Below, piece by piece: positions 43,741-61,383 of a stretch of DNA of 64,000 nucleotides. Below the pieces are notes generated by a model, which was not told the origin of the DNA, did no database searches, and saw nothing but the letters and a program-made list of their open reading frames with translations. The stretch lies in the IMG/VR virus record IMGVR_UViG_3300042010_000106, positions 1 to 64,000 of that record; one strand, 5' to 3'. The number at the start of each line of letters is the position of its first letter. Within the stretch, counting starts at the first letter, position 1. The position numbers were made by a program, and so were the translations under genes.

Positions 43741-43767
43741 GAATCCTCGGCCTTGTGTCGGGGATTC
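43741..43767 (+). repeat. variant intergenic hairpin (CTTGT loop family)
   Basis: GAATCCTCGGC-CTTGT-GTCGGGGATTC. Confidence 0.55.
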
Positions 43768-43787
43768 TTGCATTTAAGGCCCGCAAA

Positions 43788-44015
43788 ATGAACCGCTATC
43801 AAGTCCGCATAACTAACGCCCACTTTGCCAGTGCCACGCTCACAGTCGAAGCAGAGACGAAAGCAGAAGCAGAAACAATTGCTCTGTATGCCCGTCACGG
43901 TTTCCGTGTGCACTGGTCAAAGAAAGTCCCGGCGAAAAAGAAACCCACGCGGCACCACTATGGCCTGTCTGCAAAAACAACTGGCGTTGGTACTTCCACA
44001 GCGAAAGCATACTGA
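43788..44015 (+). CDS. small basic protein
   Basis: AAGG SD. Confidence 0.65.
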   Translation: MNRYQVRITNAHFASATLTVEAETKAEAETIALYARHGFRVHWSKKVPAKKKPTRHHYGLSAKTTGVGTSTAKAY

Positions 44016-44030
44016 CAAGGAATCATCGTA

Positions 44031-44405
44031 ATGCAAGTAATCGACATCACGTGCAACACGAATGGCAACAAACCTGTTTTCTGTTCCATTGTTGACGGTG
44101 TACGTTTGGAGAGTGACAGCCTTTCCAAAATGGAATGTCTGATCACCAATGTTTACCCTCAGTCGAAATACAACTACGAATTCAGCCGGGACATGAAATG
44201 GTTTCGTGTCCTGATCAAACAGCAAGGTGAATTGTATTTCTACGGCGGCATGGAAATTCTCGACGACGATTATGTGCAGCAGTTGTCCCGCGCTTTCTAT
44301 TCCAGCATGTTTGCAAACACGATTCGCATATACGACATTCACGGCGACGTGATTGGCGAGCTGACCCGCGCCGATTATAAAGCTGGCAAGTTCCCCGCGC
44401 TGTAA
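44031..44405 (+). CDS. hypothetical protein
   Basis: AAGGA SD. Confidence 0.7.
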   Translation: MQVIDITCNTNGNKPVFCSIVDGVRLESDSLSKMECLITNVYPQSKYNYEFSRDMKWFRVLIKQQGELYFYGGMEILDDDYVQQLSRAFYSSMFANTIRIYDIHGDVIGELTRADYKAGKFPAL

Positions 44406-44407
44406 AC

Positions 44408-44445
44408 GAAAGGCCCCACGCCATTAAACGGTTTGGGGCCTTTCT
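44408..44445 (+). terminator. intrinsic terminator
   Basis: GAAAGGCCCCA...TGGGGCCTTTC. Confidence 0.7.
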
Positions 44446-44496
44446 GCGTTCTAGGCCCTTTAAACCAATAGCCTCGGCCCGCGTAAACAAAACCCG

Positions 44497-44589
44497 TTGA
44501 CGCCTTATTGCGTTTCAGGCATAGTGGCTACCAGATCGGCAATTATGCCTGTTACCAAACTAACTCACGGTTCAAAGGAAGTTTCCCAA
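44497..44589 (+). promoter_or_regulatory. sigma70-type promoter + conserved leader, copy 1
   Basis: TTGACG-17-CATAGT-5-CCAGATCGGCAATTATGCC...AACTCACGGTTCAAAGGAAGTT. Confidence 0.85.
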
Positions 44590-44739
44590 ATGCGCGCATT
44601 CAATGCCCCAGCAACCCGTCGCACCGCAACTACAGCAGTAAAGAAATCTTGGCAGTGGAACAGCGACGAATTGCTGGCCGCTGAAAAACGCGCCAAGGAA
44701 GTTCAAGCGGCACAACGCCGTTTTCGTAAAGCAGCGTAA
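44590..44739 (+). CDS. 49-aa basic early protein
   Basis: AAGGA SD within leader. Confidence 0.65.
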   Translation: MRAFNAPATRRTATTAVKKSWQWNSDELLAAEKRAKEVQAAQRRFRKAA

Positions 44740-44751
44740 GGGTAATTTGAA

Positions 44752-44979
44752 ATGGCCCTTCACGCTTACACGATTATCGAACGCAAGAAGAACAGCAAAG
44801 GTGTTACCTATTCGTTGCAGCGTGACAGCGGCGAACTGGCAAACAAAGATTGTCCTTATGGTGTTTGGAAACTCTGCATCAACTATGTACGCGGCAAAAA
44901 CGTTGCGACATGGCGCTACATTGAAACCGGCCTCGATTTAGAAGCCGCACAAAAACTTTTCGCACGTCGAAGCAAATAA
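44752..44979 (+). CDS. hypothetical protein
   Basis: AAGGG SD. Confidence 0.7.
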   Translation: MALHAYTIIERKKNSKGVTYSLQRDSGELANKDCPYGVWKLCINYVRGKNVATWRYIETGLDLEAAQKLFARRSK

Positions 44980-44989
44980 GGAATACAAA

Positions 44990-45391
44990 GTGGATATCGT
45001 AATCGCAACTGGCAGCACCAAGAAAGTCAACGTTTGGAAACCGACCGCCGAAGAATGCACGCAGATTCGCGCCTTCGCCAAACGTGAAGTAAGCGGCATG
45101 AAACGGTTGGAAGGTGGTTCCCGCCACAACATGCACGACAGCAGCGTACCGACTTCGCTGAACATCGCGCTCGTTGCCAAGAAAGAAAATTGGGAGGATA
45201 CAGACCTTTCCGATTTCGTGCCGTGGGCAATCTTTCGTAAAGGCGTGGAATTGACCGAAGACGGTCGCGCCATCATCGACTTCTACGTGTACAACGCGTG
45301 GGGTTTGGAAACCAACATTTCCGTCTACTATAAAGGCGGCAAAATCGTTAAGCTGGCCCGCACTGGCCGTGGTCGTGAACTGACGTTTTAA
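44990..45391 (+). CDS. hypothetical protein
   Basis: AAGGA SD, GTG start. Confidence 0.7.
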   Translation: MDIVIATGSTKKVNVWKPTAEECTQIRAFAKREVSGMKRLEGGSRHNMHDSSVPTSLNIALVAKKENWEDTDLSDFVPWAIFRKGVELTEDGRAIIDFYVYNAWGLETNISVYYKGGKIVKLARTGRGRELTF

Positions 45392-45401
45392 CAGCACCAA
45401 A

Positions 45402-45436
45402 ACAAACCCCGCCTTGTGTGGGGTTTGTCAGTAGTG
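45402..45436 (+). repeat. intergenic hairpin+tail repeat A
   Basis: ACAAACCCCGC-CTTGT-GTGGGGTTTGTCAGTAGTG. Confidence 0.85.
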
Positions 45437-45464
45437 AAACTAAATAACCCTAAGAGGATTAATC

Positions 45465-45758
45465 ATGAAAGGCGCAATGGAAAAATGGTTGGACGAAATG
45501 TTCGGCCATTCAATCACGCAAGAAGAACGCGCATCCTACGAACATTGGTTGACTGCAACCGAGTCGATGTTAGGGCGTGACGTGGTGCGCGGTGGTGAGC
45601 TGGAAATGATTTTCCTAAAAGACTACATAGCCGGGAAAAATCCCGTGCAAGCTTCCGACGACTACAAAGCCGTTGAAGAGGAAAACAGAAAGCCACGCGC
45701 TTTGAAAATCATCAACCGCCACGGGGTTGAGTCTGACGTGATGTGGCCTTTCGACTGA
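45465..45758 (+). CDS. hypothetical protein
   Basis: GAGGA SD. Confidence 0.7.
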   Translation: MKGAMEKWLDEMFGHSITQEERASYEHWLTATESMLGRDVVRGGELEMIFLKDYIAGKNPVQASDDYKAVEEENRKPRALKIINRHGVESDVMWPFD

Positions 45759-45767
45759 CACACAAAC

Positions 45768-45799
45768 AACCCCGCCAAGTGCGGGGTTTGTCGGTAGTG
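45768..45799 (+). repeat. intergenic hairpin+tail repeat B
   Basis: AACCCCGC-CAAGT-GCGGGGTTTGTCGGTAGTG. Confidence 0.9.
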
Positions 45800-45830
45800 G
45801 AATAAACCACGCTCAATTAGGAAACGCACC

Positions 45831-46199
45831 ATGCAGAATCCAATGCTTTCGCAACTGCCACAAATCCACGCGATGTTTGCACCTAACCCGCATATCGCGC
45901 CATCGCAATTCGACATCGTGTTCGAATTGAAAACCCGGTAGGAAGCGGATCACGTGGCAATTGATATTTGCCAATTCGTTTTCACCCGCGCCACAATCGT
46001 GATTCCGCACGAAGGCAACGGCTGCATGTTCGTTACCGCAGGCAAGGATGATGTAGGCCCATGCGACCTTGCATCGCTGCGCAACATTCTTTGGCACGAC
46101 GACTATATAAAGTCGAAGCCAGAAAACATGGCGCTGCTTTTCACGCGGGCTAAGAAGCCGCAAAACAAATACCCGCGCCAACGCAGTGTGCGCCGCTGA
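45831..46199 (+). pseudogene. ORF interrupted by one in-frame TAG at 45939 (or two tandem in-frame ORFs 45831-45941 and 45954-46199)
   Basis: AGGA SD at 45831; same frame continues after TAG. Confidence 0.45.
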
Positions 46200-46213
46200 A
46201 CAGGAACCAAATC

Positions 46214-46609
46214 ATGGACAAGGAAATTGTAGACCTCGCAAAAAATCCCGAACACGTTAACGAATTGCACGATGGTGCGATTGTTTGCATAGGCGATGTG
46301 CATTTGCGTTTCTCTTTCGATTCGCTGAAGCCAGACGCCGCAACCAATCCCAAGGCGTTCGTTTTCATGACCACGTTGGATTCCGACATGGACGGGTATG
46401 AAAAAGATTGTGACCGGATTCGCGCCGAACACAAAGCGCAGTACCCGGACGTAGAAACCGAGCCGTACAGTGTTGAAACGATTTTGGGCTACGGTTGCAA
46501 TTACGGCGAGTTCATCAAGAATTTCCGCGCATCTGAAAATGGTGCAGCAATGATGACCCGTGAAGAAATGATCACAACGCTGAAGTCTGGCGTTTTCGTA
46601 ATCTGCTAA
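46214..46609 (+). CDS. hypothetical protein
   Basis: AGGA SD. Confidence 0.7.
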   Translation: MDKEIVDLAKNPEHVNELHDGAIVCIGDVHLRFSFDSLKPDAATNPKAFVFMTTLDSDMDGYEKDCDRIRAEHKAQYPDVETEPYSVETILGYGCNYGEFIKNFRASENGAAMMTREEMITTLKSGVFVIC

Positions 46610-46621
46610 AGGAGTAGGACA

Positions 46622-46906
46622 ATGAAAGTTAAAACCCCAGCTTTGAAAATGGGCAAATACGAATTGCGTGTTGACCCGACCACCGTTGACCCAACCCTGA
46701 CGCATTTTATCTTTGTGTGCGATTGCGGCTATTGGGGCAAGGGCGCCACGCTGTCAGAAGCGATTGCAGCCTCTGATAAAGAGCGCGGCTACACCACGCG
46801 TTCCAGCAATGTGCAAATCTGGATGTGTACGCCAGAATCGCGCATCAACGAAGAAGGCTCGCTCGTTTGCAAGATGGGCCAAAAACCAGCAGTAAGGATT
46901 AACTAA
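46622..46906 (+). CDS. hypothetical protein
   Basis: AAGGAG SD. Confidence 0.7.
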   Translation: MKVKTPALKMGKYELRVDPTTVDPTLTHFIFVCDCGYWGKGATLSEAIAASDKERGYTTRSSNVQIWMCTPESRINEEGSLVCKMGQKPAVRIN

Positions 46907-46923
46907 CGTCGAGGAATAAAACG

Positions 46924-47085
46924 ATGGCCGTTTATTTGATCGCTTGGATTATGTCGGTGGTGGCTTCGTGTGCAGCGAGTATCGGCATAGCAACAGGACA
47001 CCAAACAATCGGCGCCATCGTTTCGGCGTCCGCTGCTTTAATCGCACTCGGTTGCGGAATCTATGTTTTGAGGAAGGGAGAATAA
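46924..47085 (+). CDS. 53-aa two-TM membrane protein
   Basis: GAGGA SD; MAVYLIAWIMSVVASC...ALIALGCGIYVLRKGE; below track cutoff. Confidence 0.65.
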   Translation: MAVYLIAWIMSVVASCAASIGIATGHQTIGAIVSASAALIALGCGIYVLRKGE

Positions 47086-47087
47086 AA

Positions 47088-47240
47088 ATGCAGGAACCAT
47101 TGTGGTTGATCACGTACACCAGCGGCAACACGCAGGAAGAACACGGTAAGGACGAAGCCGACGTGCGAGAATTCATCGCCCGCAGCTACGCCCACGAAGG
47201 CGCTGTCAAATCCGTGGAACTTCACCCCGACTATCAGTGA
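47088..47240 (+). CDS. 50-aa hypothetical protein
   Basis: GGGAG SD. Confidence 0.65.
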   Translation: MQEPLWLITYTSGNTQEEHGKDEADVREFIARSYAHEGAVKSVELHPDYQ

Positions 47241-47248
47241 ATCAAAAT

Positions 47249-47278
47249 AACCCCGCCCTGTGCGGGGTTTGTCGGTAC
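47249..47278 (+). repeat. intergenic hairpin+tail repeat C
   Basis: AACCCCGC-CCTGT-GCGGGGTTTGTCGGTAC. Confidence 0.9.
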
Positions 47279-47311
47279 TAGCGCAATTTCGCGTACATAG
47301 GAGGCAACTTC

Positions 47312-47614
47312 GTGAACGACGCCAAACCACAAATCATTCACGGCAATTCAATTCCCGAAATACAATTCGAAAGCGGCACATTCATCAAACCCGGCTTTCG
47401 TGTACGTGTGAATTCTCGCCACGGCACGACAGGCACCGGTACAGTCAAAGATATTCGCGTGTGGCAGAATTGCCCGCCCACGATTGTTCTGGAAATGGAC
47501 GCTGACACAAATTGGTCGCAGCGTTCGCAAGCGGGTTGGCCGTTAGACGATGTACGCTTTCCAACCCTCGGCGTTTTCGGTGGCGAGATTGCCGACGTTC
47601 TGACTTTGAATTGA
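47312..47614 (+). CDS. hypothetical protein (SH3/KOW-like beta pattern)
   Basis: AGGAGG SD, GTG start. Confidence 0.7.
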   Translation: MNDAKPQIIHGNSIPEIQFESGTFIKPGFRVRVNSRHGTTGTGTVKDIRVWQNCPPTIVLEMDADTNWSQRSQAGWPLDDVRFPTLGVFGGEIADVLTLN

Positions 47615-47625
47615 GGAATGCAGTA

Positions 47626-47904
47626 ATGCGAAACAGATATCCAACCAATGCACAAAACGCAGTGTTCGCTGATCACGTCGGACAAAGCCTTTTGAAAGAA
47701 GGGCGAGACTGCGCAACATTCACCTACCTAGAGTTTTACGCACTGGTGCAGAAGTTTTGCCATTGCGAGAAATATGACGAATCAATGATGCGCCGTCATT
47801 TCCGTGAAAGCGTTCTCGGCGGTTCCGTGGAATTTGTAATCAGCTTCGGCACGAACATTGTGTTTGTCGCCAAGGATTCCAACTTCGCCCCGGTTGAAAT
47901 ATGA
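47626..47904 (+). CDS. hypothetical protein
   Basis: GAGGA SD. Confidence 0.7.
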   Translation: MRNRYPTNAQNAVFADHVGQSLLKEGRDCATFTYLEFYALVQKFCHCEKYDESMMRRHFRESVLGGSVEFVISFGTNIVFVAKDSNFAPVEI

Positions 47905-47913
47905 AAGCCACTT

Positions 47914-47944
47914 ACCCCGCCCTGTGCGGGGTTTGTCGGTAGTG
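47914..47944 (+). repeat. intergenic hairpin+tail repeat D
   Basis: ACCCCGC-CCTGT-GCGGGGTTTGTCGGTAGTG. Confidence 0.9.
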
Positions 47945-47975
47945 AACCAAGTTAATGACCGCAGGCGGAAATATC

Positions 47976-48695
47976 ATGGCTAAGAAGAAATTGGTTATAG
48001 GTGATTTCTACGATGGCAGTTCTGTCACCCTGAAGAAATACATCGACCTCGATTCAGAAATCGACAAAAGCAAAAACGTTGTCAACCTGAAGTTGGCGAA
48101 CAAGCCATGGGGCCGCATCGCGTTTATCACCAAGGGAAAGAAACCCGGTGTGTATGCGTACGTTTTGAAAGACGGCAAAGAAAAAGAATTGGCCCGTCGC
48201 TTTTTTAGTGCTGACGATCCATTGGGCTTGGAAGACGATTTCGACGAAGCGCAAATGGACATCGGCGAAATCATTGTTCACCTGTACACGCGTGGACGTT
48301 TGGAAGCCTACAAATTAATTCACTACTGCATCGGTGCAGACGCACGCGAATTCGGTGTGGTGCGTTGGGCTACCGGTTCAGGCGGCACAATTAGCAGCCC
48401 GCCTTTTCTCGACGACAAACGCTACCAATTAATTTTGGGCCGTCGTGGTGTGCCGGATTATTCTTTCGGCTTCGATACGTTGGACGAATTGAAAGCGTTC
48501 GTGTTCGATTGCCCTGACCATCTGGCATACGGCTACGTGACGATTTACAAAGTGGTCGATGGCGTTGCAGATATGCTTTGCAAACCGTCTGCAAAGAAAC
48601 ACGGGCAAGGTGACGATTTCACTTTGCTTGCCGAGTACACAAAGTTTGTCCGTATGGTCAGCGACGGCACGCGCATAGAATTGCCGCGCTACTAA
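47976..48695 (+). CDS. hypothetical protein
   Basis: long ORF, GGCGGA SD-like. Confidence 0.75.
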   Translation: MAKKKLVIGDFYDGSSVTLKKYIDLDSEIDKSKNVVNLKLANKPWGRIAFITKGKKPGVYAYVLKDGKEKELARRFFSADDPLGLEDDFDEAQMDIGEIIVHLYTRGRLEAYKLIHYCIGADAREFGVVRWATGSGGTISSPPFLDDKRYQLILGRRGVPDYSFGFDTLDELKAFVFDCPDHLAYGYVTIYKVVDGVADMLCKPSAKKHGQGDDFTLLAEYTKFVRMVSDGTRIELPRY

Positions 48696-48712
48696 TTTCG
48701 TCCGGTAGCTAT

Positions 48713-48868
48713 ATGAATCAACGATCCCCACTGTTCTACGTTTTCCGTCTAATCTTTCTGATCTTGGGTTTTTTCATCGTGCGGGCAATCTGGCGCCGCT
48801 ACACACAACCCAAGACAGAAACCAAACCATTACCAAAACAGGAACGCCCAAAATGGCCCAACACATGA
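48713..48868 (+). CDS. 51-aa single-TM protein
   Basis: MNQRSPLFYVFRLIFLILGFFIVRAIWRR...; fills gap. Confidence 0.5.
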   Translation: MNQRSPLFYVFRLIFLILGFFIVRAIWRRYTQPKTETKPLPKQERPKWPNT

Positions 48869-49215
48869 TTTTGACTTTGAGCAAATTGGTTATCGACGTT
48901 TTGCAGCACCGTTTGGAAGTGCTACAAGATCCCGGCCACGTTGCCGAGCTTTTCGAAGAACACGAAGAGCTTGATCAAGATTTGTTGGTGGAAGCTGCCG
49001 AGACGATGCTCGATGCTTTCAAACAAGGTTCTACAACGATCACGATTACCACTGACGAAGATTTGGAAATCCTGATCGACTGCATCGACGGTTGCACGTA
49101 TTTCGGCACGCCGACGAATTCAGCGAAAGAGCGCCAGCGCAAAAAGGCGTTTATCGAATTCGCCGAAAAGCTGAGCGAAGCAACCGGGCAACAAATCATC
49201 GCTGCCGTTCATTAA
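48853..49215 (+). CDS. hypothetical acidic protein
   Basis: AGGA SD. Confidence 0.7.
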   Translation: MAQHMILTLSKLVIDVLQHRLEVLQDPGHVAELFEEHEELDQDLLVEAAETMLDAFKQGSTTITITTDEDLEILIDCIDGCTYFGTPTNSAKERQRKKAFIEFAEKLSEATGQQIIAAVH

Positions 49216-49258
49216 TTCCAAACCTCCTTTCCAACCTTCGCTAAAAGAGATTTTCATC

Positions 49259-49609
49259 ATGGCTGCTAAATTGTCCGTTGTTGGTAAAACCGAACGTAAC
49301 CTCGACACCGTTTTCCCGTTTCTGGAATTCGAAGAAAAAGACGACACCGAGGAAGTCATGCTCGCGCTGAAGCAGGAATACAATTTCAGCGAGTACGACG
49401 GTGCGAACACCCTCACGCGGGGCGGTGAAGATTTCAATCTGGAACTGCGAACGGATCACAACGAGCTAGGGCACCGAGTTTTTAAAGCCGTGCTGGTAAC
49501 GTACTGCCCTTTGAACGAACACGGTTCGGAATACAACCTGTGCCCGCACGCAGCGCTGGCAGAACTTGCGGGCCTGCTTAAACCGGCCACACGGGCACGC
49601 CGCAAGTAA
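49259..49609 (+). CDS. hypothetical protein
   Basis: tiling ORF. Confidence 0.7.
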   Translation: MAAKLSVVGKTERNLDTVFPFLEFEEKDDTEEVMLALKQEYNFSEYDGANTLTRGGEDFNLELRTDHNELGHRVFKAVLVTYCPLNEHGSEYNLCPHAALAELAGLLKPATRARRK

Positions 49610-49631
49610 TCCACAGGCAACACAAACCATT

Positions 49632-49660
49632 AAGGGCGCTTCGGTGCCCTTTTTGTTTTT
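49632..49660 (+). terminator. intrinsic terminator (UUCG loop)
   Basis: AAGGGCGC-TTCG-GTGCCCTTTTTGTTTTT. Confidence 0.9.
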
Positions 49661-49670
49661 ATAAAACCGC

Positions 49671-49761
49671 TTGACGTAATGAACCCGGTTCTGTAGTTTT
49701 GGTTCCAGATCGGCAATTATGCCTGTAGAACTTAGAACTCACGGATAAAGGTAAGTTAACC
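49671..49761 (+). promoter_or_regulatory. sigma70-type promoter + conserved leader, copy 2
   Basis: TTGACG-17-TAGTTT-5-CCAGATCGGCAATTATGCC...AACTCACGGATAAAGGTAAGTT. Confidence 0.85.
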
Positions 49762-49995
49762 ATGAACACAGACGGTGCAAAGATTTACCCGACTCGCGCA
49801 AAACAAGTGACGACGTTAATCGGTTGCCCGCATTTGGAATTGGTGCAGGGCGTTGGTTACTGGTATTTCGTATACGATGACCAGCGCGGCAAATATGAAA
49901 CGCATTCTGTTCAAGTCCTGCGTCTGAATCATCTGTCGATGGTTGAGTGGATTGCAGAAGGCAAAGAATTCGTCTCCACATTTGAGGGCAAGTGA
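49762..49995 (+). CDS. hypothetical early protein
   Basis: first gene after leader 2. Confidence 0.7.
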   Translation: MNTDGAKIYPTRAKQVTTLIGCPHLELVQGVGYWYFVYDDQRGKYETHSVQVLRLNHLSMVEWIAEGKEFVSTFEGK

Positions 49996-49996
49996 A

Positions 49997-50269
49997 ATGG
50001 AATATGTTCTATACATTGTAGGAGGCGCAATTGCCTCTTACATGATTGGCGGCGCTTTTCTGCTTACCTGCGTAATCCTTTACGTCAAAGGAACGCCAAA
50101 CAATCCAGAACACGCCCGCCTGCTTATGATGTACAGCGAATGCTTACCGAAAGGAAAAGCCTACATCTGGCTTGTGGCAATCTGGTACACGGTTTTCTGC
50201 TGGGCGCCTATCGCGTTCGGCTGGATGAAAACGCCGACTGAACTTCTCAACTGGAAGAAAGAAAAATGA
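49997..50269 (+). CDS. two-TM membrane protein
   Basis: GAGG SD; hydrophobic segments. Confidence 0.7.
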   Translation: MEYVLYIVGGAIASYMIGGAFLLTCVILYVKGTPNNPEHARLLMMYSECLPKGKAYIWLVAIWYTVFCWAPIAFGWMKTPTELLNWKKEK

Positions 50270-50581: not shown

Positions 50582-50610
50582 GGCCTAAAAAGTTTTTTTT
50601 GGTAAACCGG

Positions 50611-50701
50611 TTGACACTAACGCGCCTCTAAGGCAACATTGATTCCAGATCGGCAATTACGCCCATCAACATTTGAACTCACGGATCTAAGGAAGTTAAT
50701 C
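50611..50701 (+). promoter_or_regulatory. sigma70-type promoter + conserved leader, copy 3
   Basis: TTGACA-17-CAACAT-5-CCAGATCGGCAATTACGCC...AACTCACGGATCTAAGGAAGTT. Confidence 0.85.
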
Positions 50702-54380: not shown

Positions 54381-54385
54381 CCCAC

Positions 54386-54924: not shown

Positions 54925-54960
54925 GGCGCCTGAACGCCTGTAACCGTTTCAAAACCACGT

Positions 54961-54996: not shown

Positions 54997-55049
54997 CGTT
55001 TGGGCCTATAGCGTTCTATAAGGGGCCTAGCCCCGTTTGGTTTTGGTTG

Positions 55050-55140
55050 TTGACTCTAAACGGTTCCTTTGAGATAGTGGCAACCAGATCGGCGATTTCG
55101 CCATTAAGATTACCCACTCACGGATCAAGGGAAGTTTAGA
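55050..55140 (+). promoter_or_regulatory. sigma70-type promoter + conserved leader, copy 4
   Basis: TTGACT-17-GATAGT-5-CCAGATCGGCGATTTCGCC...CACTCACGGATCAAGGGAAGTT. Confidence 0.85.
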
Positions 55141-55365
55141 ATGAAGCGCTTCGGCACCTTTAACGTCAGCCTGCAAATCATCAACGACAAAACCGGCGCT
55201 GCCGTTTCGAAAACCATGCAAGACACTTTTGCATACGAAGACATGACCGACGCCAAGGAATACTTTTCCAGCGACCGTTATCTGGAACGCGTACTGTCTA
55301 CAAAGATTCCTGTTCAACTTCGTCGTCACGTACGTTTGCAAACCAGCAACGTCGCCCACGTTTAA
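55141..55365 (+). CDS. hypothetical early protein
   Basis: first gene after leader 4. Confidence 0.7.
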   Translation: MKRFGTFNVSLQIINDKTGAAVSKTMQDTFAYEDMTDAKEYFSSDRYLERVLSTKIPVQLRRHVRLQTSNVAHV

Positions 55366-55396
55366 ATCGACCTCACTCAATTCAAGGAAACTGTAA

Positions 55397-55537
55397 ATGA
55401 ACATCACCACCATGACCGGTCACATTGCTGAACTCGCTGTACTCGCTGCATTCCTGTTTTGCTTGGGCGTGCCGACCTACATCGAAATGCGCAAGAAAGC
55501 CCGCGCACCGAAACCAACTGGCGCCACCAAAATCTGA
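55397..55537 (+). CDS. 46-aa single-TM protein
   Basis: AAGGA SD; ELAVLAAFLFCLGVPTY then basic tail. Confidence 0.6.
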   Translation: MNITTMTGHIAELAVLAAFLFCLGVPTYIEMRKKARAPKPTGATKI

Positions 55538-55545
55538 GGTGCAAC

Positions 55546-55749
55546 ATGTTTGACGCAATCGAATCACATTGCATTGACGGCACCACACTAGTGTCGCTGC
55601 ATCTGCCTGATGATTACCACGTTCTGTACGGTTTCGTTTTTGCGGACGACGTAGAGAACCACGAAATCCCCGGCGAAGTTTATACCGCTCGCGTAGACGC
55701 ATGGGATGCAGCGGAAACAGAATTTGAGTACACGTCGCATTCGTGCTGA
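55546..55749 (+). CDS. hypothetical acidic protein
   Basis: GAGGT SD. Confidence 0.65.
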   Translation: MFDAIESHCIDGTTLVSLHLPDDYHVLYGFVFADDVENHEIPGEVYTARVDAWDAAETEFEYTSHSC

Positions 55750-55752
55750 TGT

Positions 55753-55790
55753 TTCACTCATGACCGTTCTACAGAGCGAGTCATGGGGAA
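55753..55790 (+). other. putative RNase III processing hairpin
   Basis: TTCACTCATGACCG-TTC-TACA-GAG-CGAGTCATGGGGAA. Confidence 0.6.
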
Positions 55791-55824
55791 GCTAAGTTAA
55801 AATCAAGGTACAAGGAAAACCGAA

Positions 55825-56058
55825 GTGACAAAGGAACCGCGTTGGTCTGTAACCGATTTGGCAGGCCACAAAAAAGTAAAAGCCTCACTGCTTTACGTAC
55901 GTGCGAAGAAAACCCCGCTGCCTACGCCGCTGGATGAAACGCGCACGGTTTTCAACGCTACCAAATCCCGCGCAGCGGCTGCGCGTTATGCCCGTTCCGA
56001 ACTGCTGGCATGGTTTGAAACCATCGACGCAATCAAACACGTTAAGAGGATCGCATGA
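55825..56058 (+). CDS. hypothetical basic protein
   Basis: AAGGA SD. Confidence 0.7.
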   Translation: MTKEPRWSVTDLAGHKKVKASLLYVRAKKTPLPTPLDETRTVFNATKSRAAAARYARSELLAWFETIDAIKHVKRIA

Positions 56059-56375
56059 AACGTTTAATGCTGCTGTGTGCTGTGTTGTCGCTTACCGCCT
56101 GTGACTGGATGGAAAGCCCGGTGGTGCATTCGTACCAAACGAACACGTACCGCGTTGTAGAAATCAATCGCCCTAAACATTTCCGCGTTGTGCTGGAAAA
56201 CGTGAAGACAGGCGAGCGACGGAAAGTCAGTGTGTCGAAACACTGCAACCGCTGGAGGGAATTGCAAATGGGTACGCAGTTCACTTTCAACGAAGTGACG
56301 TACGTATACCCGAAGAAGCAAACGTACTTCACGCAGCTTCAAAACACACGAATCATTTGCCCCGGAAATACATAA
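56055..56375 (+). CDS. putative lipoprotein
   Basis: MKRLMLLCAVLSLTA-C lipobox. Confidence 0.75.
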   Translation: MKRLMLLCAVLSLTACDWMESPVVHSYQTNTYRVVEINRPKHFRVVLENVKTGERRKVSVSKHCNRWRELQMGTQFTFNEVTYVYPKKQTYFTQLQNTRIICPGNT

Positions 56376-56376
56376 A

Positions 56377-56523
56377 ATGGAATTGAACACAGCGAATATC
56401 AAAACCAAAGAACAGGCGCTGGCCTTCGCGCAGAAACGCGTGAATAGCTACAGCGTTGTTCAAGTCTGCTACGACGACCGCCCGCGCTATGCGTGGGGGC
56501 CTTGGGTTGTCTTCTACGGGTAA
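56377..56523 (+). CDS. 48-aa hypothetical protein
   Basis: fills gap; below track cutoff. Confidence 0.6.
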   Translation: MELNTANIKTKEQALAFAQKRVNSYSVVQVCYDDRPRYAWGPWVVFYG

Positions 56524-56532
56524 GGAGAAAAC

Positions 56533-56760
56533 ATGTTCGACAAAGAAGAATTGACCGAAGAACAAATCTGTTGGGCATGGCTGGCTGATCATGAAAACGT
56601 CGCCAGCGCGTCTAGCGATTTTCACATGTTCCGCGTTACATGGTACGTTGACGGTTTCGGGCGTTGCGAAACAAAAGCACCGACGCTGTTGGCTGCTGTC
56701 AAAAGCGCGATGACAACCACCTTCACAGCAACTGAATATTTTCCGGGTAAGGAGAAATAG
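56533..56760 (+). CDS. hypothetical protein
   Basis: AAGGAG SD. Confidence 0.7.
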   Translation: MFDKEELTEEQICWAWLADHENVASASSDFHMFRVTWYVDGFGRCETKAPTLLAAVKSAMTTTFTATEYFPGKEK

Positions 56761-56761
56761 C

Positions 56762-57022
56762 ATGGGCCAAAATATTGCGTACTACAATCGCGTTCGTGAA
56801 TTCGAAGCCGGTTGGGGAAATCGCCCTGACGGTTTTCTGGTAGCCAAGACGAAAGAGCAATTCAACGACAAGGCCAAGGAAATCAAAGCGGCGGGTTCTT
56901 ACGCTGAATTTAGCACGGTCGAAGGCGAACCGATTCTGTGTCTGGTTACTGACGACATGGCCGCACAACTGGAAGCCAAAGGCACTGTCTGGCTGAACAG
57001 TAAAGATTGGTTAGTGGAATAA
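56762..57022 (+). CDS. hypothetical protein
   Basis: AAGGAG SD; E.E.GWG.RPDG motif. Confidence 0.75.
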   Translation: MGQNIAYYNRVREFEAGWGNRPDGFLVAKTKEQFNDKAKEIKAAGSYAEFSTVEGEPILCLVTDDMAAQLEAKGTVWLNSKDWLVE

Positions 57023-57025
57023 CAT

Positions 57026-57062
57026 TTCACTCTTACCAGTTCTAACGAGCTGGTAAGGGGAA
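57026..57062 (+). other. putative RNase III processing hairpin
   Basis: TTCACTCTTACCAG-TTC-TAAC-GAG-CTGGTAAGGGGAA. Confidence 0.6.
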
Positions 57063-57098
57063 GTTAAATAAACAACCAACTAAAGGAAATTCACTGTA

Positions 57099-57281
57099 AT
57101 GAAAGATCAACTGAATACCGAAATCGAAAACGGCGACCTCGTTGCGTTGACCGACAGTTCCCACAATCTGTACACGGGCACGGTCACGAAAGTTACAGCG
57201 AAGGTAATTCACATCGGGCCTGCTTGCTATCGCCGCCCTAATGGCGTGATAGTGCTGAAGAAGCGCAGCGCCCAACAGTAA
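57099..57281 (+). CDS. small SH3/KOW-like protein
   Basis: D....I..GD.V......L..G.V.K.T.K pattern. Confidence 0.7.
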   Translation: MKDQLNTEIENGDLVALTDSSHNLYTGTVTKVTAKVIHIGPACYRRPNGVIVLKKRSAQQ

Positions 57282-57292
57282 GGAAATTCATC

Positions 57293-57610
57293 GTGGCCTA
57301 CATCGTAATCAAACGCGGTAAGTTTCTTACAGGCAGCAGTTATTGCACTGGCTTCCCTGAACGCTTTTTCTGGTCATTCAAAGAATCGGATGCACGTCGA
57401 TTCAGCGACGACCACAAGGTGTACGCGGAACAAGCCGCTAGGCAGACTGGTGGCCGTGTAGAGAAACGCACGAACACAAAACTGGAACTGCGTGCACTTG
57501 GGCGCGTCCGCATGCAAGAACGCGAAAGGGAATTGGAACGCGCAGAAGAAAACAAGCGCGCCAACGACCGACATTTAGAATGGGTGGCATCATGCGTATT
57601 GGCGAGCTGA
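57293..57610 (+). CDS. hypothetical protein
   Basis: AAGGA SD. Confidence 0.7.
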   Translation: MAYIVIKRGKFLTGSSYCTGFPERFFWSFKESDARRFSDDHKVYAEQAARQTGGRVEKRTNTKLELRALGRVRMQERERELERAEENKRANDRHLEWVASCVLAS

Positions 57611-58029
57611 TTCATAAAGCAAAATGGTTTTTGTTGGCGACTGCTGTAGCGCCATCGTTCATCTGGAATATCAACGTCGGTGTACGCTTCAGCAAAGAAG
57701 TTCGCGACTTGAAAAAACTGGTGAAAGGTTTTCAGGACGCGTACTCACTTCAGTGCAAAATTGAAGGTACGAAAAACTACCAGCGTCTGCGCGTGCGTCA
57801 TGAGACGTACGAAGGTTCCCGGTTCGGTTTGATCCACGACCTCATTATCGAGGACAGAGATTTCTGGCTGGGCACCATTCGCGTTATTGTGGACGCTGAA
57901 CGAATCAACGGCACGCCGAAAATGAAATACACCAAAAGCTACATGGTGCAAAACATGGGCGAGCATTTCAAAGAGTGCGAAAGCGTTGCCGACGCAATCC
58001 AGAAATTGGATAGCATCAAATTCTCCTAA
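57592..58029 (+). CDS. hypothetical protein
   Basis: tiling ORF. Confidence 0.65.
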   Translation: MRIGELIHKAKWFLLATAVAPSFIWNINVGVRFSKEVRDLKKLVKGFQDAYSLQCKIEGTKNYQRLRVRHETYEGSRFGLIHDLIIEDRDFWLGTIRVIVDAERINGTPKMKYTKSYMVQNMGEHFKECESVADAIQKLDSIKFS

Positions 58030-58077
58030 CGCACAGGCCCTTCGGGGCCATTGTGCTTTCCAGCGTAGGAGGTTTTT

Positions 58078-58422
58078 ATGACCATCGTTGTAATGATCCA
58101 CAATCGTACACGCGCCACCACAAAATTTCTTGGCATGGTCGAAGGCTATCTGTGCGACGTTGATACGTTGACCGACGCCCATATCTATCCAGCACTTTAT
58201 AAAGCGCATGAGGAAGTGCGCGAATTCCTGAATCGCCCGAATGTTCAAATGGGTGAACGCACAGTGCTTGACCCGGTTATCAGTAACGTCAGCAATTTGA
58301 TTCCCGGCGCATACAACGAAGTCGATTTTGAGTTTTGCGAATTGAGCCTGAAACACACCGGGACAATTATTGCAGCCATCGACGAATCCGAATCCGTTCC
58401 AAGATCCCAAATTATTAGTTGA
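58078..58422 (+). CDS. hypothetical protein
   Basis: AGGAGG SD. Confidence 0.75.
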   Translation: MTIVVMIHNRTRATTKFLGMVEGYLCDVDTLTDAHIYPALYKAHEEVREFLNRPNVQMGERTVLDPVISNVSNLIPGAYNEVDFEFCELSLKHTGTIIAAIDESESVPRSQIIS

Positions 58423-58433
58423 GGTATTCCACC

Positions 58434-58913
58434 ATGATGTTTGCAATCCACGTGACAGGCATTCCAATGTTGGCACTCGGCGCCGTTTCGGGCGCGTGCT
58501 TAAACGGACTCATGACTTCGGTGTGTTCCGAAGCTGGTTACGAAGTGGGAGGCGGCAATCACATTTTGCAGAACGGCGGCAAAGTTGAATTGACTGCTGA
58601 AGACTGCATTCGTGTTGTCGAGGTTTGGCAGGATTTGCAAATCGACGAATCCGATGCGATGGAAATTTTCGCGTCCTTGAAACATTGTGGGTTGTCCGGC
58701 GCCGATTGGGAATTCCACGTGTTCCCTGAAAAACAGGAGCTGGAAGAAATCAAAGAAGCGCGCACCATGGCTGTTCATTACTCCGACGATCTAGACGATC
58801 AAATGGACACTCTCAATAAACAAATGGAAGCACTGCATAACAAACAGCGTGCGGCATTGCGTAGTTGCGCACGTCTCGATCAAATGGTTCGCGATAGGAG
58901 TCCGTCGAAATGA
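58434..58913 (+). CDS. hypothetical protein, C-terminal coiled coil
   Basis: GAGGT SD. Confidence 0.7.
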   Translation: MMFAIHVTGIPMLALGAVSGACLNGLMTSVCSEAGYEVGGGNHILQNGGKVELTAEDCIRVVEVWQDLQIDESDAMEIFASLKHCGLSGADWEFHVFPEKQELEEIKEARTMAVHYSDDLDDQMDTLNKQMEALHNKQRAALRSCARLDQMVRDRSPSK

Positions 58914-59395
58914 ATGGTATCAATATGCGTTTTGGTATCAGCATGGACGGCGGGCCAATGATTCACGTAGGCAACGCCGGGAACCTTCAAAGCGGAATGA
59001 TTGAACTGGCCGCGAAGATTTTGAAGCGCGACCTGCACGCGGCTTTCACCATTGGTGGCGTGTGGAAGTTTGAACCAGAACAAGCACACAAGTTTTTCGA
59101 CAAAGCCAAAAACATGAGCATGGGGAATAAAGATTCTGCCATGTTCTGGTCGTCGATGATTCACGCAAGCACGCACAACACGTGGTGCCGTATTTCGTTC
59201 TTCGATCCACGTTACGAAATCGGCTACCTGCAAGATGCGTTGGAACAAAGCCAGCGTGACGCAGCGAACGCCAACGATACAGAGCGCCATTTGAAAGAGG
59301 CGGCGTTCATTGCGCAAAAGGAACGTGAAGCTGCACAGCGCCACATTGACCGCCTGCGTACTGCACTGGAGGCAAAACGAAATGAATCTGTTTGA
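58910..59395 (+). CDS. hypothetical protein, C-terminal coiled coil
   Basis: AGGAG SD. Confidence 0.7.
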   Translation: MNGINMRFGISMDGGPMIHVGNAGNLQSGMIELAAKILKRDLHAAFTIGGVWKFEPEQAHKFFDKAKNMSMGNKDSAMFWSSMIHASTHNTWCRISFFDPRYEIGYLQDALEQSQRDAANANDTERHLKEAAFIAQKEREAAQRHIDRLRTALEAKRNESV

Positions 59396-59603
59396 GAAAA
59401 TGGATTACGCGCCGACGCTAAAGCAAAAGCTGCAAGGCGAAACCAATCTGGAGTTCATGCCGTATCACGTGCGCGTACCGGGCCGACAAAGTTTTCGGCA
59501 TACGTCGTACATGTCTACGGCGGAACACGTGAAAGCGAACAAGGCGAAAGCCAAACGCAAATCCGAAAAGAAAGCGCGTAAGCAATCTCGCTCACGCAAA
59601 TAA
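59382..59603 (+). CDS. small protein with basic C-terminal tail
   Basis: GGAGG SD. Confidence 0.7.
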   Translation: MNLFEKMDYAPTLKQKLQGETNLEFMPYHVRVPGRQSFRHTSYMSTAEHVKANKAKAKRKSEKKARKQSRSRK

Positions 59604-59614
59604 GGAGAAACACC

Positions 59615-60337
59615 ATGTACCAATTAGATTCTACGGCCTACTGGTTTTTGATCGCCTGCGCCGCCGTGCTGTTCTACAAAATCATTATCCCGGCAAGCTG
59701 GAAATTCGGCGTGGTGTTTATCCGCACCGTGTTCATGTTTCTGGAAGCCAAGGAAAACGATTTCCCGCTGTGGCCTGTTTTGCGTGCGCTGCCTAAAACG
59801 TTGTGGCGTGTGTGGCGAGCAGATTTGAACACCTGCTACGATTACACGGATGTATGCCGTTTCAATTACCGCACCGGCAAGTTCGAAAGCATGCTGACCA
59901 TGGATCACGAATGGTTGAACACGCTCGCGCTTTTGATTCGGCGCGGCCAAAAGAAATTCACGCTGACATTCCCGGCTGCAATTACTTCGTGGCTGGTGAA
60001 CAAAGACGAACGCGTCACGTTGAATTTCAATATCCGCTCAATGCGCTTTCTCGACGCCACCGCAAACGTGCTGATGATTTCGGAAACCAAGCACGCAGGC
60101 ATTGACGGTTTGATTGGGCATTCGCTGCAACAATTAATTCGCGTGCTGGAGCATTACGCACCGGATGTTTTTGCAGTCGTGGTAGAAACGCCGTTGGGTG
60201 TGGTTTCTCACATTTCAACTTTGGAAGCCGAAGAGGTTTTCATCAAAGGCAAGGCGCACCAGTTGTTCGTAATCAACACGGTGACTGTCGCGCCAAAGAA
60301 AACACACCTTGAATTGGTACGCGGCCATGGTCACTAA
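59615..60337 (+). CDS. membrane-anchored hypothetical protein
   Basis: AAGGAG SD; N-terminal TM. Confidence 0.75.
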   Translation: MYQLDSTAYWFLIACAAVLFYKIIIPASWKFGVVFIRTVFMFLEAKENDFPLWPVLRALPKTLWRVWRADLNTCYDYTDVCRFNYRTGKFESMLTMDHEWLNTLALLIRRGQKKFTLTFPAAITSWLVNKDERVTLNFNIRSMRFLDATANVLMISETKHAGIDGLIGHSLQQLIRVLEHYAPDVFAVVVETPLGVVSHISTLEAEEVFIKGKAHQLFVINTVTVAPKKTHLELVRGHGH

Positions 60338-60614
60338 ATATTTGGTACGGAATGCAATCAACCAACGGCCAACCGCAAAGCACGAACACTTTGTTAGCGA
60401 CACGCTTATGACCGCCGCGTTAAACGATTTGAAACGTGACGGTTACGAACGCGTATACGCTCTTATGGTTCGTGTACGGGATATGCCACCGGGCGCCGCT
60501 ATTGTGTTCGACCTGAGCGAGCGTAAGTGTCTACGGATCGCCCACGGGTGCAGCTACGACACACAGCGCCTAATAGGGCCGCTGCTGGGCTACGGGACTA
60601 TCTCAAGGGCTTGA
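60327..60614 (+). CDS. hypothetical protein
   Basis: overlapping tiling ORF. Confidence 0.6.
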   Translation: MVTKYLVRNAINQRPTAKHEHFVSDTLMTAALNDLKRDGYERVYALMVRVRDMPPGAAIVFDLSERKCLRIAHGCSYDTQRLIGPLLGYGTISRA

Positions 60615-60701
60615 CAGGGTTTGTGGGCGCAGTACAATGAAATCCAACACGGACACACTGTGCCCGCGATTCCTACCATCACGTACAAAGGTAAGTTTCC
60701 C
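60611..60701 (+). promoter_or_regulatory. sigma70-type promoter + divergent leader, copy 5
   Basis: TTGACA-16-TACAAT-5-CCA, 5' hairpin, TCACGTACAAAGGTAAGTTTCCCATG. Confidence 0.8.
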
Positions 60702-61340
60702 ATGACTACTCAAACTCGTTCGGAAGAGCTGAAAGACTTTATCGCCAAAGCAAAAACGCAAGTTGCTTACGGTTTGGTTCCGCAAACGGAAATCGACCGT
60801 TGGGAAGCGGAATTGAAATACACCGTTTCCGCTGGCGGTTACGAAGGCGACGGTGAAATCTCCACGGATTACATCGACAGCTTTGCAACCATCGAAGACG
60901 CGATGGCGGCAAACAGGAAATACGGTTCGGATCAACCGTGGTCGCGAATCGAATTGCGCGATGGCGAATTCATTTACGAAATCGAACCGGTGCGAATTAT
61001 GCGCCGCGATCCTACAACGGGTTTCTTCAATCGTTGTTCGGATGATGGCAGCGTAATTGTCGATCACTATCGCAGCGACGATAAAGACGACAATGCAGAA
61101 ACGCCGTCCGAGTTTGAAATCGAAGACGCTATCGGGCAACTGAATAGCGTGCACTCGCACAATGACCTGATGCTGATTCTTTCCGGCTTCCCAATGGACA
61201 TTATTCGGCGCATGGCAGAAGTGCAGGAGCTAAACGACGAAGACCATTTGCAAAGCTGCGATCAACTCGCAATGGAACTGGACAAGGGCGAACTGGCCGA
61301 CCTGCTACGTGAAAGCGCGGAACACTGCGGCTACTGCTAA
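60702..61340 (+). CDS. hypothetical early protein (shares a domain with 61412)
   Basis: first gene after promoter 5. Confidence 0.75.
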   Translation: MTTQTRSEELKDFIAKAKTQVAYGLVPQTEIDRWEAELKYTVSAGGYEGDGEISTDYIDSFATIEDAMAANRKYGSDQPWSRIELRDGEFIYEIEPVRIMRRDPTTGFFNRCSDDGSVIVDHYRSDDKDDNAETPSEFEIEDAIGQLNSVHSHNDLMLILSGFPMDIIRRMAEVQELNDEDHLQSCDQLAMELDKGELADLLRESAEHCGYC

Positions 61341-61352
61341 TCGACACAAAAC

Positions 61353-61383
61353 AACCCCGCCAAGTGCGGGGTTTGTCGGTAGT
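61353..61383 (+). repeat. intergenic hairpin+tail repeat E
   Basis: AACCCCGC-CAAGT-GCGGGGTTTGTCGGTAGT. Confidence 0.9.

What the first reader, a model, noticed from the sequence alone, without database searches (positions are those of the whole stretch)
43741..61383. Family of intergenic hairpin + conserved TTTGTCGGTAGT tail elements punctuating small-gene cassettes
Seen: five copies (45402, 45768, 47249, 47914, 61353) of (A)ACCCCGC-C[ACT][AT]GT-G[CT]GGGGT-TTGTC[GA]GTA[GC]T. Each lies just after a stop codon and ~30 nt before the next start. A sixth (43741) keeps the CTTGT loop with a different paired stem. Unlike the clear terminators in this window they lack a long U-tract, and the 3' tail is conserved in sequence. 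In B and E the tail can pair back with upstream sequence (CTGACA/TGTCGG; TGCTAATCGACA/TGTCGGTAGTA) to give a long bulged stem. Inference: processing or stabilising elements, conditional terminators acted on by the leader system, or homology modules for shuffling one- or two-gene cassettes (analogous to T4-type PeSL elements). Copy E separates two paralogous genes.
Basis: partly seen in the sequence, partly recalled or inferred. Interest (0 to 1): 0.7.

Follow-up and report, generated by a model that had tools for sequence, protein, structure and literature searches.

The report
Repeated hairpin linkers between phage gene cassettes
A giant soil phage and its relatives carry a 31-base hairpin-plus-tail signal after some of their small early genes; it looks like a weak transcription stop, and small gene cassettes are lost, gained and swapped at it.

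Summary
Five copies of AACCCCGC-CNNGT-G[CT]GGGGTT-TGTC[GA]GTA[GC]T lie at 45405, 45768, 47249, 47914 and 61353 (+). They are the only copies in the 312-kb jumbo-phage genome. The sixth hairpin (43741) is not a member.

The element, tail included, recurs 2-5 times per genome in one small region of Lu11, HRDY3 and about eight metagenomic relatives. One stem pair changes on both sides, and wobble pairs work only on the sense strand. Loop bases C, G and T and the tail never drift.

The copies sit inside sigma70-driven early operons, 8-13 nt after a stop codon and 28-32 nt before the next start. They score as borderline terminators, well below the operon-end terminators. A sister form with a U-richer tail always precedes a promoter.

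Across relatives the element marks mosaic junctions. Two metagenomic strains lack exactly the 363-bp A-to-B unit, with the crossover inside the element.

Best reading: a leaky intrinsic terminator or 3' stabiliser that also serves as a homology patch for cassette shuffling. It works like T4 PeSLs but has no promoter. The long bulged stem, an RNase III site, a CRISPR-like repeat, an attC site and a promoter are not supported. What the tail does is unresolved.

The parts
45405..45435 (+). Copy A. Stem AACCCCGC/GTGGGGTT (one G.U pair), loop CTTGT, tail TTTGTCAGTAGT. 13 nt after the stop at 45391, 29 nt before the ATG at 45465.
   Evidence: (58.6 bits)
45768..45798 (+). Copy B. Loop CAAGT, tail TTTGTCGGTAGT. 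9 nt after the stop at 45758, 32 nt before the ATG at 45831. Identical to copy E over 35 nt. Orthologous to HRDY3 record position 264939.
47249..47279 (+). Copy C. Loop CCTGT, tail TTTGTCGGTACT. 8 nt after the stop at 47240, 32 nt before the GTG at 47312.
47914..47943 (+). Copy D. Loop CCTGT, tail TTTGTCGGTAGT. 9 nt after the stop at 47904, 32 nt before the ATG at 47976.
   Evidence: 67.2 bits
61353..61383 (+). Copy E. Loop CAAGT. 12 nt after the stop at 61340, 28 nt before the ATG at 61412. Lies between two paralogous genes (60702-61340 and 61412-61660).
45406..45768 (+). The 363-bp A-to-B unit (gene 45465-45758 plus one element). It is absent from the near-identical phage strains in metagenome runs X3 and X4. 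The junction 45405/45769 lies in 12 nt shared by the left arms.
   Evidence: joint table, and zero depth over 45462-45638 in X3 and X4
44490..44583 (+). Sigma70-like early promoter (TTGACG, 17 nt, CATAGT) plus conserved leader. It starts the operon that holds copies A-D. Sister copies lie at 49664, 50604 and 55043, and a more distant one at about 60611 upstream of copy E.
   Evidence: (family D3)
49632..49662 (+). Canonical operon-end terminator (GC stem, TTCG loop, TTTTTGTTTTT) closing the operon that holds A-D. It is followed at once by the next promoter.
   Evidence: d +37
44408..44448 (+). Operon-end hairpin before the 44497 promoter. At this position the relatives carry the sister 'T-type' form of the element (same stem and loop, tail TTTGTCGTTTCTGG).
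43741..43767 (+). An 11-bp hairpin with a CTTGT loop but a different stem and no tail. Not a member of the family.

Best explanation
The element is a lineage-specific intergenic module of Lu11/HRDY3-like ('Lupandier'-group) jumbo phages. On the sense-strand RNA it folds into a 7-8 bp GC hairpin followed by UUUGUC. This is a weak intrinsic terminator or attenuator placed inside long early operons that host sigma70 RNA polymerase transcribes. Part of the polymerase stops there, leaving a hairpin-protected 3' end on the upstream gene's mRNA. The rest reads on to the next gene, which starts about 30 nt later with its own ribosome-binding site. The same 31-35 nt sequence recurs at several gene boundaries and in co-infecting relatives. 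It therefore also acts as a short homology patch at which one- to five-gene cassettes are deleted, inserted and exchanged, leaving gene boundaries intact. Shown: the family, the sense-strand pairing, its position in operons, the mosaic junctions and a natural deletion with its crossover in the element. Inferred: partial termination, 3' protection, and that recombination is ordinary homologous recombination rather than a dedicated enzyme. The role of the invariant loop bases (C..GU) and of GUC[GA]GUAG in the tail is not explained.
For: Family and specificity. Conservation in Lu11, HRDY3 and metagenomic relatives, always 2-5 copies clustered in a few kb.

RNA hairpin: the outermost GC pair changes on both sides in 7 of 24 copies, and 93.8% of cells pair against 28-62% when the partner is slid. 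Wobble pairs (copy A; Lu11 10017; L014:1955; window 43741) pair only on the sense strand.

Weak terminator: T-score 2.9 with 4 T in the first 8 bases. The discriminant is about -2, against +3.8 for the T-type sister and +22 to +37 for canonical terminators.

Context: copies A-D lie between promoter 44497 and terminator 49632, with no promoter-like site between an element and the next gene. The T-type tail always precedes a promoter, and the G-type always precedes a gene 22-34 nt on.

Shuffling: the synteny map shows different genes between copies in every relative. Element pairs share only the upstream flank (5), only the downstream flank (12) or both (2). The HRDY3 homology block ends exactly at the end of B's tail, 45798. 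Strains X3 and X4 lack the A-to-B unit with the junction inside the element. B and E are identical over 35 nt although 15.6 kb apart.
Against: No transcript data exist, so termination, read-through and 3' ends are untested. A plain terminator does not need fixed loop bases or a fixed sequence beyond the release point, yet C, G, T of the loop and GTC[GA]GTAG never drift while the two middle loop bases take seven values. Hairpins with the same stem in a Pseudomonas genome have varied loops. Cassette replacement also occurs at boundaries without the element, for example 44741-44979 in X3, so the element is not required for exchange. The terminator discriminant formula was recalled from memory (d'Aubenton-Carafa 1990). 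Only the ranking should be trusted.
Confidence: 0.6

Rival explanations
1. The element is a specific recognition site. A phage- or host-encoded protein, or modified RNA polymerase, reads the loop C..GU and the tail GUC[GA]GUAG. Termination, processing or mRNA decay at these sites would then be regulated: a conditional terminator, an antitermination or processing site, or a 'stoperator'-like block.
For: Loop bases C, G, T and nine tail bases are invariant in more than 30 copies from phages as far apart as Lu11, while neighbouring positions vary. Host-genus hairpins with the same stem show no such loop. The tail lies beyond the expected release point of a terminator. A 5-nt complement of the tail is present upstream in 11 of 22 contexts against 5.1 expected (p 0.006).
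Against: No candidate binding protein was identified: neighbouring genes have no Pfam or PHROG function. There are only 2-5 sites per genome. The tail never occurs without the hairpin. Concerted evolution by the observed recombination could keep copies alike without any binder. The pairing excess is weak, and orthology was only partly removed.
Confidence: 0.2
2. They are ordinary terminators. The tail is a passenger kept only by recent common descent and gene conversion among copies, and the cassette variation around them is simply what happens in any hypervariable early region.
For: The hairpin type with a CNNGT loop also occurs with canonical U-tracts in relatives (L014:1955). B and E are identical, showing recent copying. 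Replacement without the element occurs. Hairpin plus tail occurs in ordinary chromosomal context in a Pseudomonas genome.
Against: The tail is intact in Lu11, whose best-conserved coding DNA here is only about 67% identical, while the adjacent two loop bases and flanks have diverged. Junctions of mosaic blocks fall at the element repeatedly.
Confidence: 0.15
3. It is a true PeSL: the tail or hairpin is also a promoter (for host polymerase with a phage factor or phage sigma), so each cassette is an independent transcription unit.
For: The element sits 22-34 nt before the next start codon, a typical leader length. In some relatives the whole spacer up to the ATG is shared between junctions. The phage encodes a sigma factor (PMC7412058 for the group).
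Against: No -35/-10 pair was found in or after the tail by scan or by eye. GGTAGT lacks the A at position 2 of a -10 hexamer. The motif is absent from the rest of the genome, so it is not a general middle or late promoter. No T7-like polymerase domain was found, but the control was silent, so this is weak.
Confidence: 0.05
4. It is a site-specific recombination site (integron attC-like, REP/RAYT-like) or a solitary CRISPR-repeat mimic (RNA anti-CRISPR).
For: Hairpins follow promoterless small genes in one orientation, and cassettes are lost precisely. The stem CCCCGC/GCGGGG equals that of type I-E CRISPR repeats (from memory). GTAG occurs in the tail as in REPs (from memory).
Against: attC core sites RYYYAAC/GTTRRRY are absent. 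The observed crossover is in the left arm, not at a G/TT site. Only a sub-threshold tyrosine-recombinase-like hit lies 135 kb away. GTAG is on the wrong side of the hairpin for a REP. No Rfam CRISPR-DR family matches even at E 10. No array of this repeat exists in 185,579 species genomes.
Confidence: 0.03

Closest known systems
PeSL (promoter-early stem-loop) cassettes of T4-type phages (Arbiol et al. 2010, PMC2839356; Comeau et al. 2014, PMC4122927)
   Same: Both are repeated intergenic modules that run from one gene's stop codon towards the next gene's start. Both hold a GC-rich stem-loop thought to terminate or attenuate. Both are concentrated in the hypervariable region of small orphan early genes. 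Indel and replacement breakpoints between close relatives fall in them, and an excision leaves one chimeric copy.
   Different: PeSLs are defined by a strong sigma70-like promoter joined to the stem-loop, and none is present here. The phage's sigma70 promoters form a separate repeated unit with their own leader. The conserved part here is about 31-35 nt (up to about 70 nt in some relatives) against about 100 nt. There are 2-5 copies per genome against about 50. Mini-circles were not tested. The phage lineage is unrelated (Lu11-like jumbo phages).
Intrinsic (Rho-independent) terminators and intra-operon attenuators
   Same: A GC-rich 7-8 bp stem with a short loop is followed directly by UUU, with an A-rich stretch upstream. 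It sits just after a stop codon and is co-oriented with transcription.
   Different: The U-tract is only UUUGU. The scores are borderline. The loop and the distal tail are fixed in sequence, which terminators do not need.
REP hairpins as mRNA 3' stabilisers inside operons (E. coli malE-malF; from memory)
   Same: Both are repeated intergenic hairpins inside polycistronic units. They can protect the upstream mRNA and set unequal expression of neighbouring genes.
   Different: REPs are host elements in hundreds of copies with a 5' GTAG and cognate RAYT transposases. Here there are few copies, GTAG lies 3' of the hairpin, and no RAYT is present.
Linker/boundary sequences of the modular theory of phage evolution, and morons (lambdoid phages)
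   Same: Short conserved sequences at gene boundaries allow exchange of neighbouring genes. A gene can travel with its terminator.
   Different: Morons carry their own promoter and are not bounded by a shared repeat. Here the repeat itself is the shared boundary.

Membership tests
PeSL (T4-type promoter-early stem-loop) | Strong sigma70-like promoter (-35, -10, AT-rich upstream) inside the module | tested here: not met
   No promoter-like site in or after any copy. The tail hexamers lack key -10 bases. The phage's own sigma70 promoters are a separate family.
PeSL (T4-type promoter-early stem-loop) | GC-rich stem-loop acting as terminator or attenuator | tested here: inconclusive
   The hairpin is present and conserved, with one pair changed on both sides. 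Terminator activity is only predicted and is borderline.
PeSL (T4-type promoter-early stem-loop) | Located in the hyperplastic region next to orphan genes, with indel and replacement breakpoints between relatives at the motif | tested here: met
   All flanking genes lack Pfam or PHROG function. Mosaic junctions and a precise 363-bp loss fall at the element.
PeSL (T4-type promoter-early stem-loop) | Mini-circles formed by recombination between flanking copies | not testable with these tools
   Needs inverse PCR on infected cells. One 2075-nt metagenome contig with the element at both ends is compatible with a circle or with an insertion.
Intrinsic terminator | Stable GC-rich hairpin directly followed by a U-rich tract of about 7-9 nt | tested here: inconclusive
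   Hairpin -9 to -11 kcal/mol. The tail has 4 U in the first 8 bases, T-score 2.9, discriminant about -2, against +22 to +37 for clear terminators.
Intrinsic terminator | RNA 3' ends at the U-tract in vivo or in vitro | not testable with these tools
   No RNA run was listed for this phage.
RNase III processing site (T7 early type) | About 20 bp or more of (interrupted) double helix, conserved across copies | tested here: not met
   The core stem is 8 bp. Extended pairing of the tail with upstream sequence is no better than shuffles across 21 copies. Only a weak 5-nt excess remains.
Integron attC | Inverse core and core sites (RYYYAAC ... GTTRRRY), crossover at G/TT, and an IntI integrase | tested here: not met
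   The core sites are absent from the consensus. The observed crossover is in the left arm. Only a sub-threshold PF00589 hit lies elsewhere in the genome.
REP/REPIN | GTAG-type tetranucleotide 5' of the palindrome, many copies, cognate RAYT | tested here: not met
   GTAG lies 3' of the hairpin. There are five copies in the genome. RAYT was not searched for. The defining features are from memory.
Solitary CRISPR repeat / RNA anti-CRISPR | Close likeness to the repeat of a host CRISPR array | tested here: not met
   No CRISPR-DR family matches at E up to 10. The pattern is never arrayed in 185,579 species genomes: three solitary hits only.
N4-type hairpin promoter | T7-like virion RNA polymerase; 5-7 bp stem with a 3-nt loop | tested here: inconclusive
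   The loop is 5 nt, not 3. No PF00940 match was found, but the control genomes were silent too. The Lupandier group is reported to rely on sigma factors (PMC7412058).

The most novel reading that the evidence does not exclude
The hairpin with its fixed C..GU loop and GUC[GA]GUAG tail is a dedicated cis-site read by an unknown phage factor. The factor could switch termination on or off in the early operons. Or it could catalyse cassette exchange at these sites, making a promoterless, phage-borne counterpart of an integron-like cassette system in jumbo phages.
Probability: 0.15. Interest if true: 0.75.

Novelty: new variant of a known kind. Interest (0 to 1): 0.45.

Why it matters
Jumbo phages carry long stretches of small orphan early genes, and how these are gained and lost is poorly understood. 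Here a short, recognisable signal marks where such genes are swapped in one lineage, and natural strains differ by exactly one repeat-to-repeat unit. This extends the T4 PeSL idea (regulatory repeats as recombination linkers) to an unrelated phage group and to a form without a promoter. It also gives annotators a marker for cassette boundaries. The strictly fixed loop and tail make a clean target for testing whether a terminator-like hairpin carries a second, sequence-specific function.

Tried and rejected
- **Long bulged stem / RNase III site.** Folding of 71-nt windows gives extended pairing in B and E. Across 21 copies, tail-to-upstream duplex energies equal shuffles. A 5-nt complement is weakly enriched (one search had an indexing slip, corrected in 68).
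- **Sigma70 promoter in the tail.** No hit, and manual spacing checks found no -10.
- **Phage RNA polymerase promoter.** No PF00940 hit, but the control was silent.
- **Integron-like system.** Only a sub-threshold integrase-like hit, and no core sites.
- **CRISPR-repeat mimic.** No Rfam CRISPR-DR match and no arrays.
- **Rfam.** Nothing at gathering threshold in the window.
- **Function of neighbouring genes.** PHROGs and Pfam give nothing useful.
- **RNA-seq.** No run listed.
- **Region around copy E in four metagenome runs.** Contigs simply break at the repeat, with no rearrangement seen.
- **Strand map by longest ORFs.** Too noisy to use.
- **Viral-contig hits to the 16-nt tail pattern.** Most of the 39 were chance matches without a hairpin.


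Full report
**What the window is.** The window is the first 64 kb of a single 312,325-bp contig with 48.7% GC and direct terminal repeats, a jumbo phage. It was assembled from rhizosphere or soil metagenomes. Its nearest named relatives are Pseudomonas phages HRDY3 (313,683 bp) and, more distantly, Lu11. These belong to the 'Lupandier' group, which is reported to encode sigma factors (PMC7412058). A sigma70 region-2 match lies at 224249-224377 on the minus strand.

**Observation.** The pattern CCCCGC-N5-GNGGGGT occurs five times on the + strand against 0.15 expected. With their flanks the copies are 45405-45435 (A), 45768-45798 (B), 47249-47279 (C), 47914-47943 (D) and 61353-61383 (E).
- Regex, tail-only and covariance-model searches find no other copy in the genome. 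The model gives E 1e-16 to 3e-20 for the five and 2e-3 for the next best hit.
- The tail never occurs without the hairpin.
- Each copy lies 8-13 nt after a stop codon and 28-32 nt before the next start.
- The hairpin at 43741 shares only the CTTGT loop and is not a member.
- B and E are identical over 35 nt.
- The genes on either side of E are paralogs.

**Relatives.** The same hairpin and tail occur in several places:
- HRDY3 and Lu11;
- six IMG/VR contigs of 113 to 314 kb;
- eight further metagenome contigs.

There are always 2-5 copies, always clustered within a few kb, and always co-oriented with the genes. Across 24 aligned copies:
- The outermost GC pair is C-G in 17 copies and G-C in 7, a change on both sides.
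- 93.8% of cells pair, against 28-62% when the partner is slid.
- The loop is always C-N-N-G-T. The two middle bases take seven values, while C, G and T never change.
- TTTGTC[GA]GTAG is almost invariant.
- Wobble pairs in this hairpin type pair only on the sense strand. This favours an RNA structure of the transcribed strand over a DNA palindrome. Examples are copy A, Lu11 10017, L014:1955 and window 43741.

**Two tails, two contexts.** A sister form has the same stem and loop but the tail TTTGTCGTTTCTGG. It sits at the end of the upstream operon in HRDY3, Lu11 and four other relatives, and it is always followed by the sigma70-like promoter and leader. The GGTAGT form is always followed 22-34 nt later by a start codon, with no promoter-like site between.

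In the window, the promoter-plus-leader units lie at 44490, 49664, 50604, 55043 and about 60611. Copies A-D lie between the promoter at 44497 and the canonical terminator at 49632. Copy E follows the first gene after the 60611 promoter.

The elements score as borderline terminators:

| Form | T in first 8 bases | T-score | Discriminant |
|---|---|---|---|
| GGTAGT form (this element) | 4 | 2.9 | about -2 |
| T-type sister form | 5 | 3.23 | +3.8 |
| Canonical terminators | 7 | 4.5-5.1 | +22 to +37 |

The discriminant formula was recalled from memory, so only the ranking is used. The most economical reading is a leaky terminator or attenuator inside the early operons that also leaves a protective 3' hairpin. 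This is inferred, because no RNA run was listed.

**Cassettes.** A synteny map of the window and eight relatives shows a conserved backbone. Between elements, small gene families appear in different combinations and orders. For pairs of element copies from different genomes:
- 5 pairs share only the upstream flank;
- 12 pairs share only the downstream flank;
- 2 pairs share both.

Anchored displays show identity starting or stopping within a few bases of the element. The HRDY3 homology block ends exactly at 45798, the last base of B's tail. In several relatives the whole spacer is shared between junctions that have different genes on both sides. That spacer is the hairpin, the tail and a leader with the ribosome-binding site, about 70 nt in all.

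Near-identical strains in other metagenomes give direct evidence:
- In runs X3 and X4, from different studies, a contig joins 45405 to 45769. The joint skips exactly the 363-bp A-to-B unit, and 12 nt fit either side.
- No contig covers the skipped gene in those runs, although the neighbours have depths of about 40 and 4.
- A and B share no 31-mer in the window sequence, so an assembly collapse is unlikely.
- Run X2 has a 2075-nt contig that begins and ends in a D-like element, at the same depth as the phage. This could be an extra cassette flanked by two copies, or a circle.
- Exchange also happens without the element: X3 replaces 44741-44979 by 295 other bases.

**Rejected readings.**
- *Long bulged stem or RNase III site.* Not a family feature. 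Only a weak excess of a 5-nt complement remains, often C-UGA-C including the stop codon (11 of 22 contexts against 5.1 expected).
- *Promoter.* No -35/-10 was found, and the motif is absent elsewhere in the genome.
- *T7- or N4-like polymerase promoter.* No PF00940 hit, though the control was silent. The loop is 5 nt, not 3.
- *Integron attC.* No core sites, the crossover is in the left arm, and the only integrase-like hit is sub-threshold.
- *CRISPR-repeat mimic.* No Rfam CRISPR-DR match and no arrays in 185,579 genomes.
- *Neighbouring genes.* They have no recognisable function.

**Comparison with the known.** The element works like the PeSLs of T4-type phages (PMC2839356; PMC4122927). Both are repeated regulatory stem-loop modules in the orphan-gene region at which cassettes are excised, inserted and replaced. 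It fails the defining PeSL feature, a sigma70 promoter inside the module. It is also shorter, rarer and from an unrelated lineage. I therefore file it as a new variant of a known kind: a promoterless terminator-type linker. The fixed loop and tail are unexplained and leave room for a sequence-specific reader (rival 1).

**Verdict.** The shuffling interpretation is supported by comparative and population data. The terminator role is plausible but untested, and the tail's function is open. Interest is 0.45.

Noticed in passing
window 45939-45941: An in-frame TAG interrupts the gene 45831-46199 (122 codons). All four other metagenome strains laid here (X2-X5) read C at 45939, giving CAG. The amber is therefore private to this assembly: a pseudogene, a suppressed stop or an error.
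   Followed up: partly
window 44490-44583, 49664-49757, 50604-50697, 55043-55136, about 60611-60701, about 41942: A repeated early-promoter unit: TTGAC., 17 nt, a -10 such as CATAGT, then a conserved leader of about 55 nt with a small hairpin (GGCAATTATGCC) and ACTCACGG..AAGGAAGTT before the ATG. It is also present in HRDY3.
   Followed up: partly
window 44741-44979: In strain X3 the 75-codon gene 44752-44979 is replaced by 295 unrelated bases. Runs X4 and X5 also lack it. This is a cassette swap at plain gene boundaries, without the hairpin element.
   Followed up: no
window 47908-47950 (run X2 contig of 2075 nt): A contig carries a D-like element at both ends and a diverged homolog of 46643-46746 inside, at the same depth as the phage. 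It is either an extra cassette flanked by two identical copies or a circular form.
   Followed up: no
L047 3299-3326 (Pseudomonas sp. CFBP 13711), L048 (Aquabacterium MAG), L046 (a MAG): Hairpin plus tail (GCCCGC-CCCGT-GCGGGC-TTTGTCAGTAG) occurs once in a Pseudomonas chromosome, in a spacer before the 3' end of a convergent GGDEF-EAL gene, and once in an Aquabacterium MAG, both with the CNNGT loop. Other hairpins with this stem in that Pseudomonas genome have varied loops. Chance, phage-derived DNA or a shared terminator class was not resolved.
   Followed up: partly
L049 248-307 (Lu11): The T-type tail CTTTGTCGTTTCTGGC follows a quite different, longer hairpin. So this tail is also conserved independently of its stem.
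   Followed up: no
L001:7058, L037:2888, L044:977, L021:12844; window 47280-47311: At least two recurrent leader types follow the tail: AAACCAAAC..CCTTTATCAAGGAAT and AGCGCAAT..CGCG..TAGGAG. They are shared between junctions with different genes.
   Followed up: partly
alignment of 22 copies: The stem variant GCCCGC/GCGGGC goes with tail GTCAG, and CCCCGC/GCGGGG goes with GTCGG. The one exception is copy A. This could be two sub-lineages or a coupling.
   Followed up: no
window 5926-6119: A long run of GAAGAC/GAGGAA-type 9-12 nt repeats, reading as an acidic Asp/Glu-rich stretch.
   Followed up: no
genome 195880-196161 (-) and 224249-224377 (-): A 563-aa ORF has a sub-threshold tyrosine-recombinase-like match (24 bits). 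A 348-aa ORF has a sigma70 region-2 match above the cut-off.
   Followed up: no
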